Positions 35,400 through 60,072 of a stretch of DNA of 64,000 bases are shown in pieces (positions within the stretch are counted from its first letter, which is position 1; each line of letters begins with the position of its first letter). Source of the DNA: Haplodiscus bocki (taxonomy: Eukaryota); the NCBI GenBank assembly GCA_965655095.1, contig OZ296653.1:27590001-27654000 (forward strand), in the 5' to 3' direction. The notes below the pieces were generated by a model. The model saw only the letters and a list, made by a program, of their open reading frames with translations, was not told the DNA's origin and ran no database searches. Made by a program: the position numbers and the translations under genes.

Positions 35400-36520
35400 C
35401 CATGAGAATTTAAGTAGTTTTCCTTGATGTGTCTTTAGACTTTAGAATGTTGCGCAACTTTAGAATGATGAATTTTGACAATTCATTTTTTACCTTCAAG
35501 AGGTTCGTCTCCTAAACGTAAACTGCATTTTCATTTCAATTTATCTTTTCTAGCGTTCTGTTTGCTAGCTGTTTTTATTTGTCTGTTATACTTTTTGATA
35601 ATTTTTTAAATAGTGTCATTTTCTAACATTACTCTTGCTGTATGAAACAACATGAGCGTTTTAGGGTTGTTTTGACCTTTTCAACAGCTTCCCTTGCTCC
35701 TCTACATCTTTTGTTAATAGTTGAATAGTCTTTAAATACTCAGTTTGCATTTTCTTTTTTGTCGGAAAAATCTATATCATGGAGTAATTCAGTAATTCAT
35801 CTGCAGTTTTTACGAACTTACAATTAATTATTTCAAACTCTACCGATAATTTATTCAAATTTCTTTCGAACCAGTTACTTATTTTCTGTCAGTTTTTTAT
35901 AAATTGGATTATGTCCTTTTTAAAGTCATTAGTTTATTCTTCAGTGATTGAAACTTGATTTAATTTGTTTTTGTACATAATTTTGTATTGATTTAACATT
36001 CGGCAACACTTTGTTTCATTTGATTGAGACTATTATCATGTAGTGTGTCATTTCGAGACACAATATATTGCAGTTAATTACAACTAAGTTCATCATAACT
36101 TAAACAACTTGTTCTTTTCCATCAATTTTGTCTTTTGATTTTGATAACTGTGTCTTCAAACTTTCCATATGAACGCTGCTTTTTCGTTTTATAAATTTTT
36201 TTTTGTTTTTTTCTCATACGGGCCGTACTCAATATGTTTCATATAACTTGCTGTTCTCTTTTCAAGAACTACAATATCAGGAAATCGAACAAAAATATCA
36301 TCGCGCTTTGAAATTGAAGCTTCTCTAATGCAAGGCGTCCTCATTTCTAAGTTTTCTGCCGTTTCAGCTTCTGTAATTAATGATTGAAATTTTGTACCTT
36401 TTGATTTTTGTGTTATATTTTCTAAAACGATCACTTTCTATCACTGGATATGAACTTTTTTGCTACTTGAACTAGTATTCATCATAAGTGTTTTCTGTTA
36501 ATGATTTTATCCAAGTGAAA
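35400..36520 (-). pseudogene. Possible repeat-rich fiber-like gene remnant
   Basis: TPCIREASISKRDDIF resembles the recalled DPxSIREAASKxYVD repeat. Otherwise very decayed. Confidence 0.3.
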
Positions 36521-54345: not shown

Positions 54346-55433
54346 ATGTCATCAGACAGCGATTCACTTGTTCCTGATTGGATGGGAGCGCTGGCTGTAC
54401 AGATAGATGGGTCGAGAGAGCCCCTGAGGATCAGAAGTTTTTCTCAATTCCTCTACTTTTCCGTGTCTCTGCCCACCTTCCCACTCATTTTTCTGTACTT
54501 GCTCGTGATCCAGTGCTCTGCTGTTTGGACACGCAGGGTCGCACCGTTTCAAATGCGAAAGGTGACATATATTTTATGCCTTTTTAAATGTATTCTTTTG
54601 AGTACAGCATTGTGATTGGTAAATGGAAACAGAAGGAGGTATAAATAATTGATATTGGCTTTTTGTTTGTTATAGAAAGTACGTTAGATGAAATTTGATT
54701 CCTAATTTGAGTCGAACCCAAACTCGCTCGACGACCCTATCAAAATTAATAACAGTAAAATAATACCTGTTAATTGAAGAAATTAAGATAGAGAGAAGGC
54801 AGCAATTTAATATCGAGATAGTAGAGCATAAATCTGTCATTTCTACTAAAATTGTTTCAGCTTTTGGTTATCTACAATTTGCTATGCAGTCTTATCAATG
54901 TCATCTGCTTTGTCTTATTCTTCATGGGTATTTACACCAAGGGTCAAATTTACAGCCGCGACACGAATGTGCCAACTCGACTTGCTTTCAGGATTTACTT
55001 TTACTCAAAAATAATGGAACTACTCGACACTGTTTTTATGATCCTCCGTCACAAACGCAGACAAATCTCATTCTTACACGTATTTCATCATGCCTCCATG
55101 GTTTTACTTTGCGACTTCGGAGTTCAGAATGGATGCCGGATATCCTTTTGCTACCCCATGGGCGTGAATTCATTCATCCACATTCTAATGTACGGCTACT
55201 ATGCTGCATCGGCTGCCGAAATCCCATTCATATCAGCAAAAGGAGCCAGTATCAAGAAACGCCTGACACAGCTGCAGCTCACTCAGTTCTATACGGATTT
55301 GATACAAATTGGATATGGAATCTATCTGCAGGAGTATTGCATATACTCTGTTTTCTATGCCTTCTCCATGATCATTCTGTTCACTAATTTCTACATAAAA
55401 GCCTATAGAAATGATAAAACTAAGAGTCAGTAA
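54346..55433 (+). CDS. ELOVL: Very-long-chain fatty acid elongase (ELO/GNS1/SUR4 family); exons 54346-54561 and 54861-55433, 262 aa
   Basis: Phase-0 intron (AAG|GTGACA...TTTCAG|CTT) joins PFQMRK to LLVIYN. Motifs KIMELLDT, FLHVFHH, NSFIHILMYGYY, TQLQLTQF. C-terminal KTKSQ fits a KxKxx ER-retrieval signal. Confidence 0.93.
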
Positions 55434-55654
55434 AATCTATCCTTTGTTATTTTTCGCCGCATATTTATAATATGCAAGAAAAATTATTCATTCAGTAAGG
55501 CCGTTTTTCTTCCAATTTTGCCAACTCTTTCTATTCAAAAATAAATGTCAGCAATGGGGTTATGACAGAAGTTTCTCAAGCAGCAGACCCCGGTTCAAAT
55601 CTCCGTCGTGTCAGATATTTTTATGATTTCACTGACATTTGTCAGAATTTCCAA

Positions 55655-55718
55655 TTGTTCCCATGGCACAGTGGGTAGGATAACAGGATTCTGAAGAGGT
55701 GCGGGTTCGAATCCCAGC
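55655..55718 (+). mobile_element. tRNA-derived SINE head (Pol III A and B boxes), interrupted by the RTE insertion; continues from 58814
   Basis: A box TGGCACAGTGG 55664-55674 and B box GGTTCGAATCC 55704-55714. No complete cloverleaf seen. Confidence 0.6.
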
Positions 55719-58700
55719 ATTCTTCTTCTTTTCACCATGACCGTTGCAGTCTTAGGTTCCATCTTCCATTTTCTTCCACTTCTCTTTGTCATTTGCTTTT
55801 AGTTCTGCAGTTCTCATATCCTTTATTTTCATATTCTCGAATACAATCGAAGTCCAATTTGTTCTTCTTTTTCCTCTTCCTTTCTTTTCATTAACAATCA
55901 TCGTCATTTTCTTCAGATCTTTTCCTGCAGATTCTCTAAGTATGTGTACCAGGTATCTGATTTTCCTTTTAACTGATTGCAGGAGTTCAGGCTTTTCAAT
56001 TTTATTTTTTAGAAGAACTTCTTCATTTGAGACATAGTCGTTCCAGCTGATCTTTAATATTCGTCTGTAGCACCAGAGTTCAGAGGCTGTAATTTTCTTT
56101 TGGAGCGATTTCGTCAGTGCAAAGCATTCCGATCCGTATCTCAATATAGACCATACATGAGTTTTTAGTAATCGCAGTTTCGTCTTGAGTCTAATGTTGT
56201 TTCGCAGGAGTTCTTTGTTTCCAGAAGGCTTGCTTAGATTTCGCAATATTGGCCCGGACATCTACGTCATGTTTCATCGTCTCATTTATCCATATTCCCA
56301 AGTACTGAAAATTACTGACTTGTTCTAACTTGTCATCACCAATTTGTATATCTTTTTTTTGAGTTCCATTGTCTGTCACAACCATGCATTTAGTTTTCTT
56401 TGGATTTATTTCAATCAACCACTTCTGCAGGTTGCTTTTTATTTTATTCAGAGTGTCATTCAGTTCCTTCTCGCTTTTGGCCATTATAACTGTGTCATCT
56501 GCGTAACTAATTTTGTATATTTTCTTTTTCTCGTATATTTCGATCCCGTTTTTAATCTTGAAGCTTCTAAACGCCTCTTCGGCGTAGATAATAAACAGAA
56601 TGGGTGAAAGGATACACCCTTGCCTGACGCCTCGTTTTATTTTTATTTCGTTTTCTCGCTCACTGTCGTTCCGCATGAATGCTCGTTGTTTGTTGTATAA
56701 TTCGCAAATCAGACGAATTTCAGCTTGTTTCACTCCTTTCTTCTTCAGGACTTCAATGAGCATTTTTTGTTCAACTCTGTCAAAGGCTTTGGTAAAGTCA
56801 ATAAAGCAAAGGTAAGTACTTTTCCTATGATTTATTCTGTTATTCAGGATCGTTTTTGGAGCTGTAATACTTTCCACAGTTCCAACCTTTGGTCTAAAAC
56901 CGAATTGTAGTGGGTCTAGTTGCCTGTTAATTTTAGTGCTAATCCGATTGTACATTGTTTTTCATAAGATCTTCATTGCGTGAGGTATAAGCGCAATTCT
57001 TCTGTGCGCTTCAGACTTTTTCGTTCCTGACTTTTGTGGGATTTCCACAAAGATGGATTCGAATAACTCTTCCGGAATTTCTTCTTCTTGCTGATAGATT
57101 CGATGAATTAGTTGGCAGACTTGTGACAGTGTTCTGTTACCACCATACTACAGAAATTCCATGGGAATGTCGTCACTTCCCGGGTATTTGTTGTTGCTGA
57201 TTCCCCTTGCCGCATTAAAGATTTCCACAAGAGATATTTCATCGTTTTCAGTCGTCTTGTATTCTGGTCTTTCAAGCTTGCTGTCATATAGCTCTTCCAT
57301 GTATTCTTTCCATCGTTTGTTTATCTTGTCTTTTTCTCCTAAAAAGGGATCCATTTTTATCGGCTATTGATTTGTTTTGTTTAGGTTTTGCTTTTGGTGC
57401 AAGTTGTCTGACAAGTTGTTACATTTTCATAGTCTCGTTTCTATTTTCAAGGTCTTCAACCTCTCGGCATTTTTGTTCTATTTCTTCATCTTTTGCTTCG
57501 CAGCATTTTCTGCGTATTGACTTCGGAAGTTCTTTCACTGCTCGTTGGTCATTTTCGTTCCGTCGCTGATTCATTAGTTCAATTATTTCATCAATCGTCC
57601 AATTATTCCTTTCGTTTCTTTTTTTTCGGTATGCAGTTATTCGCAGCTTTTGTTAGTCTCTTCTTTATATCCACCCAAGTATTTTCACCTGTGATTTCTT
57701 GTTCTTCCACATACTTCCTGAACTGGTGTTTGTTTTTTGTCTGTCTCAGCCAGCCAACGTCGATGCGGTCTTCCCTTCTCGGTTTCTTGATTCTTTGCAT
57801 GTGTTTTCTTCAAAGTACCGATTACTGGATCGTGATCAGATAGCTTGTCAACTTTGTGTGTGACCTTACACTTCCGCAAAGATTTTTCGTGCTTTTTGTT
57901 TATGGTAATATAATCAATCAGACTTTGTCCTTTTCCACTATCGCTTTTCCACGTGTAGTTTTTACTTTTTTGATGCTCAAGAACGTGTTCTCTGCTACAA
58001 GTTTATGTTTCTCACAGAATTCCACAAACGATCTTCCGTTTCTATTGTTTTCGTTGTTTCCATATTTTCCAGTTATACCCTTGATCTCGTTACAGCCGAT
58101 TCTGCCGTTAAAATCTCCCATAATCACAACTTGCCTGTTCTTTCCTGTGTTCAGTTGCGTCCTTACTTTTTCAACTTTTCCGTAGCACTTCTCTACCTCT
58201 TCTTTTTTTGCTGATATGTCGGGTATGTACACTTGGATCAGAACTGCGCAATTTCGACCCATGTCCAGATTGATTCCAATTACATTTGGTCCTTCTGATG
58301 CTACATTTATAACTCGCTGGTCCAGCTTATCGCAAATTAAGAAGCCAACTCCTTTTCGTCCTGTATCATCACAGTCACTTACATACAGCTTGTACGTTCT
58401 TTCATTCCTTTTTGTAGGCCGTAGGGTGTAAGTGTTGGCCTTTATATATGTTTCAGCTAATCCCATCACGTCGATGTTGAGACGGTCCATTTCTTCGCAT
58501 AGCATCTGCTGTTTTCCTGTTTCTCTCAAACTTCTGATATTCCATGTAGCAATTTTAAGTTTTTGTTTGCGGTTTTCGCTTGTTAACGACCCGAGGAGCC
58601 TCATATCTCCCCCTGCCGGACGAGGTTCTGTTACCAGTCCCATTGACGTCGTTGTTTGAATTTTGTGTTGTGGATTGCATGTTGAAGATGGTTTACCATT

Positions 58701-58813
58701 GCTGCATTGGCCGTTCCTCACGTTACGCGAGGCCCGTTGCCCAGGGAATCCCAGGGAGACCCTATTTGTAGGGAAACCCACTCGTGGAGGGTGCAGTTGG
58801 CTTTTTATTCCCC
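55719..58813 (-). mobile_element. Full-length (~3.1 kb) RTE-clade LINE, frameshifted, with 7-bp target-site duplication TCCCAGC
   Basis: Single APE-RT frame: IATWNIRSL, GLAET, GDFNGRIG, SDH, QFGFR, FIDFTKAFD, GVRQGCILSP, YADD, YGSE. (AAG)n tail at about 55720-55732. TCCCAGC at both 55712-55718 and 58814-58820. Confidence 0.93.
58702..58813 (-). ncRNA. HDV-like self-cleaving ribozyme candidate at the RTE 5' end
   Basis: P1 GGGGAAU/AUUCCCU with G1-U wobble, P2 CUGCA/UGCAG, P3 CCC/GGG, L3 starting UCC pairing with GG (P1.1), GCAAC junction, P4 CCUCGCG/CGUGAGG, J4/2 GCCAA. G1 (58813) directly abuts the TSD. Confidence 0.75.
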
Positions 58814-60072
58814 TCCCAGCCTTTACCTACCTTTTCAACTTTAGTAATACGACGGAAAATTGTGATACCCCATCTCTTACGCATGGAAATTTTCGATGTC
58901 ACAATTTTTCTGAATCACAGAAGAGTTCACCTACGAATTTTTTCAGCACTGTGAGACAATCAATTTTCAACGGAAAATTGTGATAATTTTTGCATAAATC
59001 TAATTTTTAGATAAATTTAGAAATCAGTGATGGAATTGATGTTTGTAGAAAACCTTTGAAAACTAGATTCAAAATAGTAGTTTAACTGTTAGCAAAAGTT
59101 GATTAAACTATTTCTAGTTGGGCGAAAAATATACCGGCGCTAGCCGACCGTCTTGTTTTTTTTATTTCAATCTGCGATCGATTAATGGCAGCAATGTTGC
59201 GAAAAGTTTCTGATATACTTGGGCCCCTGCTTGTCAACTTTTGACGAAACAGAAAATATCACATTGCTCACTGCGCATTTTGTCTAATTTATCAAATCTC
59301 CAGCATTTTAGTCTCATTTTTTTCTTCAAAATCGCAAGTTTTTGGCGACATGATTTTATCTCATTGGGGGTAGGTTTTTGCGATGCGCCCTTATTTCCAT
59401 TTACCAAAATTTTTCCCATCAGCTTTTGAAAAACAGGATCAAAAGTTTCTGTGATGCCGGTTTTGCATATTCGAAGCCCTGAAATTGATCGAATTTGAAC
59501 GTTCCAGAACTTGCTCAAAAACTTGAAGCTGTCGCAAAAAATTTTTGTGTTTAATAATTTTCAGCCCTAATTAACGCAGAAAATTTTGCAAATTTCGGAA
59601 AAAATTCAAAGAGTATTTCCTCCTCAACTACGCATTTTTAGGAAATGAATAACAACTTGTTTGAAAGGTCTATCATGAAGCTCTAGTTTGGTCTGGTGAG
59701 CCGATGTCGACGCGCGCCGCCCTTTGGAATTCGGTTTGTAACAACGGCGTGCTATTGGGTTTTAACGCACTGGTCTTATGTGCGTGATGATTTAGGGTTG
59801 CTACTTCATATTCAGCAAGCATTTTGGAGAAAAGTGTCCTATGCGAAAAAAGTGAATGGTCAGGAAATCTGGCTGTTTTTTGACATGAAAGTGCCCATTA
59901 AAACCGTAATTCTGTTAAAACTGGACAATATAACAGGAGAATGAAAAATATAGCGTCCTAATGAATGTGTGTTTGTGGAAAATTGATCCGGAATTTGAAA
60001 AAACGGTTGCCTGCTTTAAAGCAGCGCTACGTCTGTTAAGATTATACTTGATTTATGCATTTTCAGAACTCT

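What the first reader, a model, noticed from the sequence alone, without database searches (positions are those of the whole stretch)
58750..58790. Extra structured hairpin inserted in loop L3 of the HDV-like fold
Seen: between L3 (UCCACGAGU) and the P3' GGG that precedes P1' lies GGG-UUU-CCCUA-CAAA-UAGGG-UCU-CCC (58779-58754), a self-contained hairpin. Equivalently, the P3'-P1' decamer is present three times (GGGUUUCCCU, GGGUCUCCCU, GGGAUUCCCU), and only the third is followed by GG-GCAAC. Known: HDV-like ribozymes usually vary in J1/2 and P4, while L3 is short and part of the active site. Inference: an undescribed architectural variant that standard descriptors would miss, or a register switch in which decoy P3'/P1' copies tune cleavage.
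Basis: partly seen in the sequence, partly recalled or inferred. Interest (0 to 1): 0.8.

Follow-up and report, generated by a model that had tools for sequence, protein, structure and literature searches.

The report
Hairpin insert in retrotransposon HDV-like ribozyme
A hepatitis-delta-type self-cleaving RNA that trims the 5' end of a small family of jumping genes carries an extra 28-base hairpin beside its active-site loop in the older copies; the insert is real and inherited, but whether the RNA still cuts with it is untested.

Summary
On the minus strand, 58813-58695 folds as an HDV-like ribozyme. Its cleavage site (5' of G58813) is the exact 5' end of a 3.1-kb APE+RT, RTE-like retrotransposon (58813-55719, target-site duplication GCTGGGA).

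A 28-nt block (58781-58754) lies between the L3 core (UCCACGA) and the P3'/P1' strand. It forms a hairpin of -11.5 kcal/mol and is built from two extra, imperfect copies of the P3'-P1' decamer.

The insert is not private to this copy. Of 17 copies in this genome that keep the element's 5' end:
- nine carry the insert;
- two carry it minus 10 nt;
- six lack it and have a textbook 8-nt L3.

The insert-bearing copies are older (2-7% private divergence against 0.7-1.7%). Their target-site duplications place the 5' end at the same G1. Relatives in other organisms, and a second ribozyme in this genome, have 7-nt L3 loops.

Rfam's HDV model aligns the short form end to end but finds nothing in the long form.

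No compensatory changes were seen, because all copies descend from one insert. Cleavage activity is not shown. Decoy registers are nearly isoenergetic with the active one.

Verdict: a lineage-specific, apparently tolerated variant of a known ribozyme class, of moderate interest.

The parts
55719..58813 (-). Whole retrotransposon copy. It has a single APE+RT reading frame, now broken, and a (GAA)n-type 3' tail. It is flanked by the target-site duplication GCTGGGA at 58820-58814 and 55718-55712.
   Evidence: Pfam Exo_endo_phos and RVT_1 on the ORF pieces. Alignment of 17 copies locates the ends. Target-site duplication. ORF pieces.
58807..58813 (-). P1 5' strand, GGGGAAU. The predicted cleavage site is 5' of G58813, which forms a G-U wobble with U58743.
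   Evidence: Sequence. Homology among copies starts exactly here. The target-site duplication abuts G1. Compensatory P1 changes occur in relatives.
58792..58801 (-). P2 5' strand: GCCA, a bulged A, then CUGCA. It pairs with 58706-58695.
   Evidence: MFE fold. The best P2 helix was found by script.
58789..58791 (-). P3 5' strand, CCC.
   Evidence: Relatives have GCC/GGC or ACC/GGU.
58782..58788 (-). Conserved L3 core, UCCACGA. It corresponds to U20, C21 and C22 (the P1.1 strand, 58787-58786) and G25 of the genomic HDV numbering.
   Evidence: Rfam RF00094 alignment of the insert-free sister copies. L3 is U20-U27 in HDV.
58754..58781 (-). The 28-nt block that is absent from the short-form copies. 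It holds two decoy copies of the P3'-P1' decamer and folds as a 5-bp plus 3-bp hairpin with a CAAA loop.
   Evidence: Indel in the alignment of copies. Fold of -11.5 kcal/mol. It occurs only in 11 copies of this family. It is present in contigs from separate runs.
58743..58752 (-). The functional P3' (GGG, 58752-58750) and P1' (AUUCCCU, 58749-58743). This is the only decamer fully complementary to P1.
   Evidence: Register energies.
58741..58742 (-). GG, the P1.1 3' strand. It is followed by GCAAC, as in HDV.
58716..58732 (-). P4 hairpin: a 7-bp stem with a 3-nt loop.
   Evidence: Folds. P4 differs in sequence but stays paired in relatives.
58707..58715 (-). J4/2, with C58710 as the candidate general-acid cytosine (the C75 equivalent).
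   Evidence: In the short form, the Rfam alignment places GGCCAAUG on GGCuAAuG of the model. The role of C75 is described.
58695..58706 (-). P2 3' strand: UGCAG, CAA, UGGU.
58641..58643 (-). First in-frame ATG of the endonuclease-RT frame.

Best explanation
The stretch is the HDV-like self-cleaving ribozyme at the 5' terminus of a low-copy, promoter-less RTE-like non-LTR retrotransposon.

How the element is thought to work. A read-through transcript folds into the double pseudoknot and cuts itself 5' of G58813. This releases the element RNA with a defined 5' end, which is then reverse-transcribed.

What the insert is. In one lineage of this family, the 10-nt P3'-P1' segment was locally multiplied and picked up a 7-nt spacer. 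The result is a 28-nt block between the L3 core and the genuine P3'/P1'. In the nomenclature the block lies in J1.1/3, or equivalently in J3/1.

Why it may be tolerated.
- Each decamer reads GGG...CCC, so the two extra copies pair with each other and form a self-contained hairpin.
- That leaves the third, perfectly complementary copy free for P1.
- All core residues are kept: U20, C21, C22 and G25 of L3, the GG of P1.1, and the J4/2 cytosine.

What is shown and what is inferred.
- Shown: the anatomy, its inheritance, the ages of the copies and their ends.
- Inferred: the insert was tolerated, because insert-bearing elements kept producing new copies with the correct 5' end over a long period.
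- Inferred: it probably made folding slower or less reliable, because the decoy registers compete with the active one.
- Inferred: the youngest subfamily, which lacks the block, most likely lost it.
For: Ribozyme identity:
- Short-form copies align over all 89 positions of Rfam RF00094 (33 bits). P1, P3, L3, GGGCAAC, P4 and GGCnAAUG are all in register.
- Relatives in other organisms share 43-48% protein identity. They keep the fold with changed but still paired P1, P2, P3 and P4.

5' end equals the cleavage site:
- Homology among 16 copies starts at G1.
- Target-site duplications abut G1 in long copies L022, L023 and L025, and in short copies L032, L033, L036 and L037. The other copies have 1-8 unrelated extra bases.
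- RTEs are reported to lack promoters of their own (PMC6765202).

Inheritance of the insert:
- It is in 9 copies, plus 2 copies with a 10-nt deletion, and nowhere else in the genome.

Ages:
- Long copies form a star with private branches of 2.2-6.6%.
- Short copies form a supported clade (0.99) with branches of 0.7-1.7%.
- All 10 short-allele copies have 0 mismatches in a 26-mer, against 0-2 mismatches in the 18 long-allele copies.
- At the one diagnostic site that can be polarised, outgroups carry the long-lineage residue.

Folding:
- Hairpin of -11.5 kcal/mol.
- With fixed helices, the register using the third decamer is 8-12 kcal/mol better than the decoy registers.
Against: - No cleavage assay and no RNA data exist for this organism, so activity of the long form is an inference.
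- When the rest of the RNA is allowed to refold, P1 paired to the first decoy (-39.5 kcal/mol) is as stable as the active register (-39.2) at the nested level. The decoy is also transcribed first, so misfolding could be severe.
- The two 'mid' copies (P1 GGGUAAU, third decamer deleted) have no acceptable P1, yet at least one has its 5' end at G1. Either their changes arose after insertion, or a precise 5' end does not require a good ribozyme.
- The direction of change (loss versus gain of the 28 nt) rests on copy ages and on one amino-acid site.
- Every copy has a broken reading frame.
Confidence: 0.6

Rival explanations
1. The insert kills or nearly kills the ribozyme. Under this reading, the long-form copies obtained their 5' ends some other way. 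Possible routes are a transcription start at +1, processing by another nuclease, or reverse transcriptase stopping at a structured end. The insert would then be simply a deleterious duplication that was later purged.
For: - L3 is the active-site loop and is 7-8 nt in every characterised member and in every relative found here.
- The decoy register is isoenergetic with the active one and is transcribed first.
- The 'mid' copies, which lack a usable P1, still have the same 5' end.
- The canonical form is the one that gave the youngest copies.
Against: - Eight independent long-form insertions spanning about 2-7% divergence all begin at G1, as precisely as the short forms.
- The sequence at +1 does not look like an arthropod initiator. 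This is my own reading of the sequence.
- RTEs are reported to lack promoters.
- All catalytic residues and a perfect 7-bp P1 are retained, while the decoys have mismatches.
Confidence: 0.27
2. The decoy P3'/P1' copies are an evolved register switch. The RNA first folds into an inactive register and converts to the active one under some condition, such as a protein, temperature or transcription speed, so that cleavage is timed.
For: Three registers lie within about 2 kcal/mol of each other at the nested level. The order of transcription favours the decoy first.
Against: - No related element shows the arrangement.
- There is no lineage-level variation with compensation.
- The arrangement was lost in the most recent subfamily.
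- The family has only about 30 copies.
- A palindromic decamer gives such pairings automatically when it is duplicated.
Confidence: 0.07
3. The short, canonical form is ancestral and persisted unseen. Under this reading, the insert arose on a side branch that happened to leave all the old full-length copies and then died out.
For: - Outgroups are canonical.
- The indel and 8 substitutions lie on a single unrooted branch.
- The 28-nt difference is not a clean repeat-to-repeat deletion.
Against: - All 10 older full-length copies carry the insert, and all short-lineage copies are young.
- The one site that can be polarised makes the short lineage derived.
Confidence: 0.3

Closest known systems
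HDV-like ribozymes at the 5' ends of RTE and other non-LTR retrotransposons (Ruminski et al. 2011, J Biol Chem 286:41286; cited in PMC3774820 and PMC6765202)
   Same: - It has the double-pseudoknot fold.
- Cleavage is at the first nucleotide of the element.
- The element is promoter-less with a single APE+RT ORF.
- Dispersed copies have unrelated upstream flanks.
   Different: A 28-nt hairpin-forming block lies between the L3 core and P3'/P1' in the older subfamily. I found no description of such an insert, but the two key papers (Ruminski 2011; Webb and Luptak 2011) were not held in the library and could not be read.
Genomic HDV ribozyme (Rfam RF00094)
   Same: The short form matches it position for position:
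- a 7-bp P1 with a G-U wobble at the cleavage site;
- a 3-bp P3;
- an 8-nt L3 of the form UCCnCGnU;
- GG then GCAAC;
- GGCnAAUG in J4/2.
   Different: - The score of 33 bits is below the 50-bit gathering threshold.
- The long form is not detected at all.
- P4 is shorter.
- P2 has an internal loop.
Large HDV-like ribozymes with peripheral domains in J1/2 (Webb et al. 2016, PMC4908430) and R2 ribozymes (PMC3774820)
   Same: They are natural HDV-like ribozymes that carry extra structured domains outside the core.
   Different: In those ribozymes the extra domain sits in J1/2 or P4, at the periphery. Here it sits next to the active-site loop, at the 3' side of L3 or at the P3'-P1' crossover.

Membership tests
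HDV-like self-cleaving ribozyme | Nested double pseudoknot: P1, P1.1, P2, P3 and P4 in the canonical order. | tested here: met
   All helices can be drawn for the window copy. The short sister copies align to RF00094 over the whole model. P1, P2, P3 and P4 change but stay paired in relatives L039, L041 and L049. The long form meets this only if a 28-nt insertion is allowed.
HDV-like self-cleaving ribozyme | Cleavage 5' of the first P1 nucleotide, with a G-U wobble closing P1. | tested here: met
   G58813 pairs with U58743. The element's 5' end, defined by target-site duplications, coincides with G1. The cleavage chemistry itself was not tested.
HDV-like self-cleaving ribozyme | Catalytic cytosine in J4/2 (C75 equivalent). 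| tested here: met
   C58710 lies in GGCCAA, which the Rfam model aligns to GGCuAA in the short form. The role of C75 is described in PMC13635239.
HDV-like self-cleaving ribozyme | Short L3 (7-8 nt) carrying the P1.1 cytosines and the G of the U-G reverse wobble, followed directly by P3' and P1'. | tested here: not met
   The core residues UCCACGA are present. However, L3 is 36 nt if P3' is the third GGG. Alternatively L3 is 9 nt with a 27-nt linker before P1', if P3' is the first GGG. The short form meets the feature (8 nt).
HDV-like self-cleaving ribozyme | Score at or above the Rfam gathering threshold. | tested here: not met
   The long form gives no hit at E<=10. The short form scores 33 bits against a 50-bit threshold.
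HDV-like self-cleaving ribozyme | Self-cleavage that yields a 2',3'-cyclic phosphate and a 5'-OH. | not testable with these tools
   No RNA runs are on record for this organism.
RTE-clade non-LTR retrotransposon | Single ORF with an N-terminal APE endonuclease and an RT, about 3.2 kb long, short UTRs, and a simple-repeat 3' tail. | tested here: inconclusive
   Pfam domains. Length of 3.1-3.3 kb and a (GAA)n tail. The best protein matches are unclassified endonuclease-RT proteins of arthropods. No clade phylogeny was made.

The most novel reading that the evidence does not exclude
The long form is a catalytically competent natural HDV-like ribozyme that accommodates a 28-nt helix at the 3' edge of the active-site loop, or at the P3'-P1' crossover. 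That position is held fixed by all descriptors and covariance models. It would mean the family's core is more plastic than assumed, and that searches miss a class of variants.
Probability: 0.5. Interest if true: 0.6.

Novelty: new variant of a known kind. Interest (0 to 1): 0.5.

Why it matters
HDV-like ribozymes are found with descriptors and covariance models that fix L3 at 7-8 nt and allow nothing between P3' and P1'. Here one retrotransposon family carries a canonical form and a +28-nt form in the same genome, and the rest of the sequence is nearly identical.

This is a ready-made natural pair for asking how much the catalytic core tolerates. It also allows a test of whether duplicated strand copies act as folding traps.

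If the long form cleaves:
- search tools have a blind spot;
- the site could be a new place to graft sensor domains.

If it does not cleave, the precise 5' ends of the old copies need another explanation. That would bear on how RTE elements define their ends.

Tried and rejected
- Rfam on the whole window at gathering thresholds, and on 58400-59100 at E<=10, gave nothing relevant.
- A search for RNA sequencing runs found only four runs of unrecorded type from one study, kept as contigs. There is no evidence on expression or RNA ends. Laying those contigs only confirmed the sequence.
- A metagenome pattern scan for the conserved 3' half of the ribozyme gave 0 matches.
- Relatives:
  - L042 and L044 show no recognisable ribozyme motifs, probably because the copies are 5'-truncated or decayed.
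  - L043 is cut inside P1'.
  - L045-L047 (33-38% identity) have no recognisable ribozyme upstream.
  - L048 is degenerate.
- I did not build a covariance model of my own.
- Covariation within the insert cannot be tested, because all 11 copies share it by descent. Their few differences are private decay.
- Papers: Ruminski 2011, Webb 2009, Webb and Luptak 2011 and Chadalavada 2007 are not held. The claim that no L3 insert has been described therefore rests on an incomplete search. My recollection that deleting U27 of the genomic HDV ribozyme is tolerated could not be checked.
- Assembly artefact and chance were considered and rejected.
- The column-majority line printed served only to find the element's ends.

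Full report
WHAT IS THERE

Read on the minus strand, window 58813-58695 has every element of an HDV-like ribozyme:
- P1: GGGGAAU (58813-58807), pairing with AUUCCCU (58749-58743), with a G-U wobble at the first pair.
- P2: CUGCA (58796-92) with UGCAG (58706-02), extended by GCCA/UGGU.
- P3: CCC (58791-89).
- L3: begins with UCCACGA.
- P1.1: CC (58787-86) with GG (58742-41), followed by GCAAC.
- P4: a 7-bp hairpin (58732-16).
- J4/2: GGCCAA, with C58710 as the C75 equivalent.

Alone it folds at -11.5 kcal/mol, with z = -2.1 against shuffles.

Downstream is a broken reading frame with an Exo_endo_phos domain and an RVT_1 domain. The element ends at 55719 in a (GAA)n-type tail. It is flanked by a 7-bp target-site duplication.

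Rfam reports nothing here, either at gathering thresholds or at E<=10.

THE FAMILY IN THIS GENOME

The window belongs to a 1.5-Gb eukaryotic assembly. A DNA search found 17 places that hold the 5' end of this element. Pattern searches found no more. About 28-30 copies exist in all.

In 16 of the 17, similarity begins at the predicted cleavage site and the upstream flanks are unrelated. The seventeenth is a short internal fragment. The copies come in three forms:
- Long: nine copies, including the window and the fragment, carry the 28-nt block (window 58781-58754).
- Mid: two copies carry the block but lack 10 nt (the third decamer), and have GGGUAAU as P1.
- Short: six copies lack the block. 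They read CCC-UCCACGAU-GGG-AUUCCCU-GG-GCAAC, a textbook HDV core with an 8-nt L3.

Rfam's HDV_ribozyme model aligns these short copies over all 89 positions with every helix in register. The score is 33 bits, below the 50-bit threshold. The insert therefore really does hide the ribozyme from a standard model.

ENDS OF THE COPIES

Target-site duplications can be read for most copies.
- They abut G1 directly in three long copies (the window copy, L023, L025) and four short copies (L032, L033, L036, L037).
- The remaining copies have 1-8 extra bases with nothing in common between copies. I read these as junction additions of the kind generally seen at non-LTR 5' junctions (general knowledge, not checked here).

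Long and short forms are thus equally precise at the 5' end. RTEs are reported to lack promoters and to be released from co-transcripts by the ribozyme (PMC6765202; PMC3774820). This is the main, indirect argument that the long form was processed at the canonical site.

AGES AND DIRECTION OF CHANGE

A tree of the element body, with the ribozyme excluded, gives the following:
- long and mid copies form a star, with private branches of 2.2-6.7%;
- short copies form a clade with support 0.99 and private branches of 0.7-1.7%.

Eight substitutions separate the two lineages. In a 26-mer around one of them, all ten short-allele copies are unmutated, whereas the eighteen long-allele copies carry 0-2 changes.

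At the only diagnostic site that can be polarised, ten outgroup proteins carry Ala or Gly. Ala is the long-lineage residue; none carries the Ser of the short lineage.

Insert-bearing elements therefore transposed over a long period, and the insert-free lineage is the most recent. A secondary loss of the block is the simpler reading. An unseen persistent canonical lineage is not excluded.

RELATIVES ELSEWHERE

The closest proteins in public data share 41-55% identity and come from arthropod-type sources. Where the 5' region could be read, the findings were:
- L039/L040: a canonical ribozyme with a 7-nt L3 and nothing between P3' and P1'. P1 is GGGGUCU/AGACCCU and P3 is GCC/GGC.
- L041: also canonical with a 7-nt L3. 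P1 is GGGUUC/GAACCU and P2 is ACUGAC/GUCAGU.
- P4 has a different sequence in each relative but stays paired.
- L043 starts inside P1' and matches the window's 3' half.
- A second, unrelated HDV-like candidate in this genome (L049:1503-1566) also has a 7-nt L3.

The fold is thus supported by compensatory changes across lineages. The insert is specific to one lineage of one family.

ORIGIN AND FOLDING OF THE INSERT

The block consists of two imperfect copies of the P3'-P1' decamer (1 and 2 mismatches to the genuine one) plus a 7-nt spacer. Each decamer reads GGG...CCC, because P3' is GGG and P1' ends in the complement of the G-rich P1. Duplicated copies therefore pair with each other automatically.

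With helices fixed, the register that uses the third decamer and a folded insert is 8-12 kcal/mol better than either decoy register. It makes little difference whether P3' is taken as the third GGG (a long L3) or the first GGG (a 9-nt L3 followed by a 27-nt linker, J3/1 in the nomenclature of PMC13635239).

When the rest of the molecule is allowed to refold, the picture changes. P1 paired to the first decoy reaches -39.5 kcal/mol, against -39.2 for the active register, because the second and third decamers then pair with each other. These figures ignore the pseudoknots and the tertiary structure that only the active register can form.

Even so, they show that a competing fold exists, and the first decoy is transcribed first. 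I conclude that the insert leaves all catalytic residues in place and is sterically conceivable, because it enters after the G25-A26 equivalents. It probably costs folding efficiency.

WHAT REMAINS UNEXPLAINED

The two mid copies share GGGUAAU and the 10-nt deletion but have no acceptable P1 in any register. At least one of them nevertheless appears to start at G1. They share no other derived changes beyond the background level.
- If their source element already had both changes, a good ribozyme was not needed for a precise 5' end. That would weaken the main inference.
- If the changes arose after insertion, the identical G-to-T change in both copies is an odd coincidence.

COMPARISON WITH WHAT IS KNOWN

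HDV-like ribozymes at RTE 5' ends are established. Known size variation is in J1/2 and P4 (PMC4908430; PMC3774820). L3 is 7 nt in CPEB3 and antigenomic HDV and 8 nt in genomic HDV. I found no report of a helix inserted at the 3' edge of L3 or between P3' and P1'. The primary papers on retrotransposon ribozymes were not available to read, so this is not a firm negative.

VERDICT

It is not shown to be functional or conserved, and it has no compensatory support. It is best filed as a new variant of a known kind and is worth a bench test.

Noticed in passing
window 55640-55718 and 58814-58870: The element sits inside a tRNA-like repeat. The flank reads ...GGTTCGAATCCCAGC on the plus strand, which looks like a T-arm. 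The upstream flank has contig depths in the thousands, and loose ends continue with the same tRNA-like sequence. This suggests a high-copy tRNA-derived SINE. ARAGORN calls no tRNA here.
   Followed up: partly
L009/L030 (G000:C2:42564832-42565034) and L010/L031 (G000:C6:43112153-43112354): Two old copies share a 10-nt deletion that removes the genuine P3'/P1' decamer, plus a G-to-T change at P1 position 4. No HDV register pairs properly, yet the 5' end is where it should be.
   Followed up: partly
L049:1503-1566 (G000:C604, about 35992-36055): A second, unrelated canonical HDV-like ribozyme candidate: P1 GGCCCUU/AAGGGCU, P3 ACC/GGU, L3 UCCUCGU, a P4 hairpin with a GCAA loop. It scores 35 bits with RF00094. 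Its genomic context was not examined.
   Followed up: no
all 17 copies (L022-L038): More than half of the roughly 30 copies of this family reach the 5' end, which is unusual for LINE-like elements. Every copy has an interrupted reading frame, including copies that are under 1% diverged. The 3' (GAA)n tail varies from 3 to more than 12 units.
   Followed up: partly
window 54852-55433, plus strand: An open frame with a fatty-acid-elongase-like histidine box (LHVFHHASM) appears in the mechanical ORF list. It is probably an exon of a host ELO-family gene next to the element.
   Followed up: no
window 58811-58817: In this copy only, the flank plus the first element bases (GGGAGGG) can pair 6 of 7 with the second decoy decamer. 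This comes from the insertion site, is not shared by other copies, and is taken as chance.
   Followed up: yes
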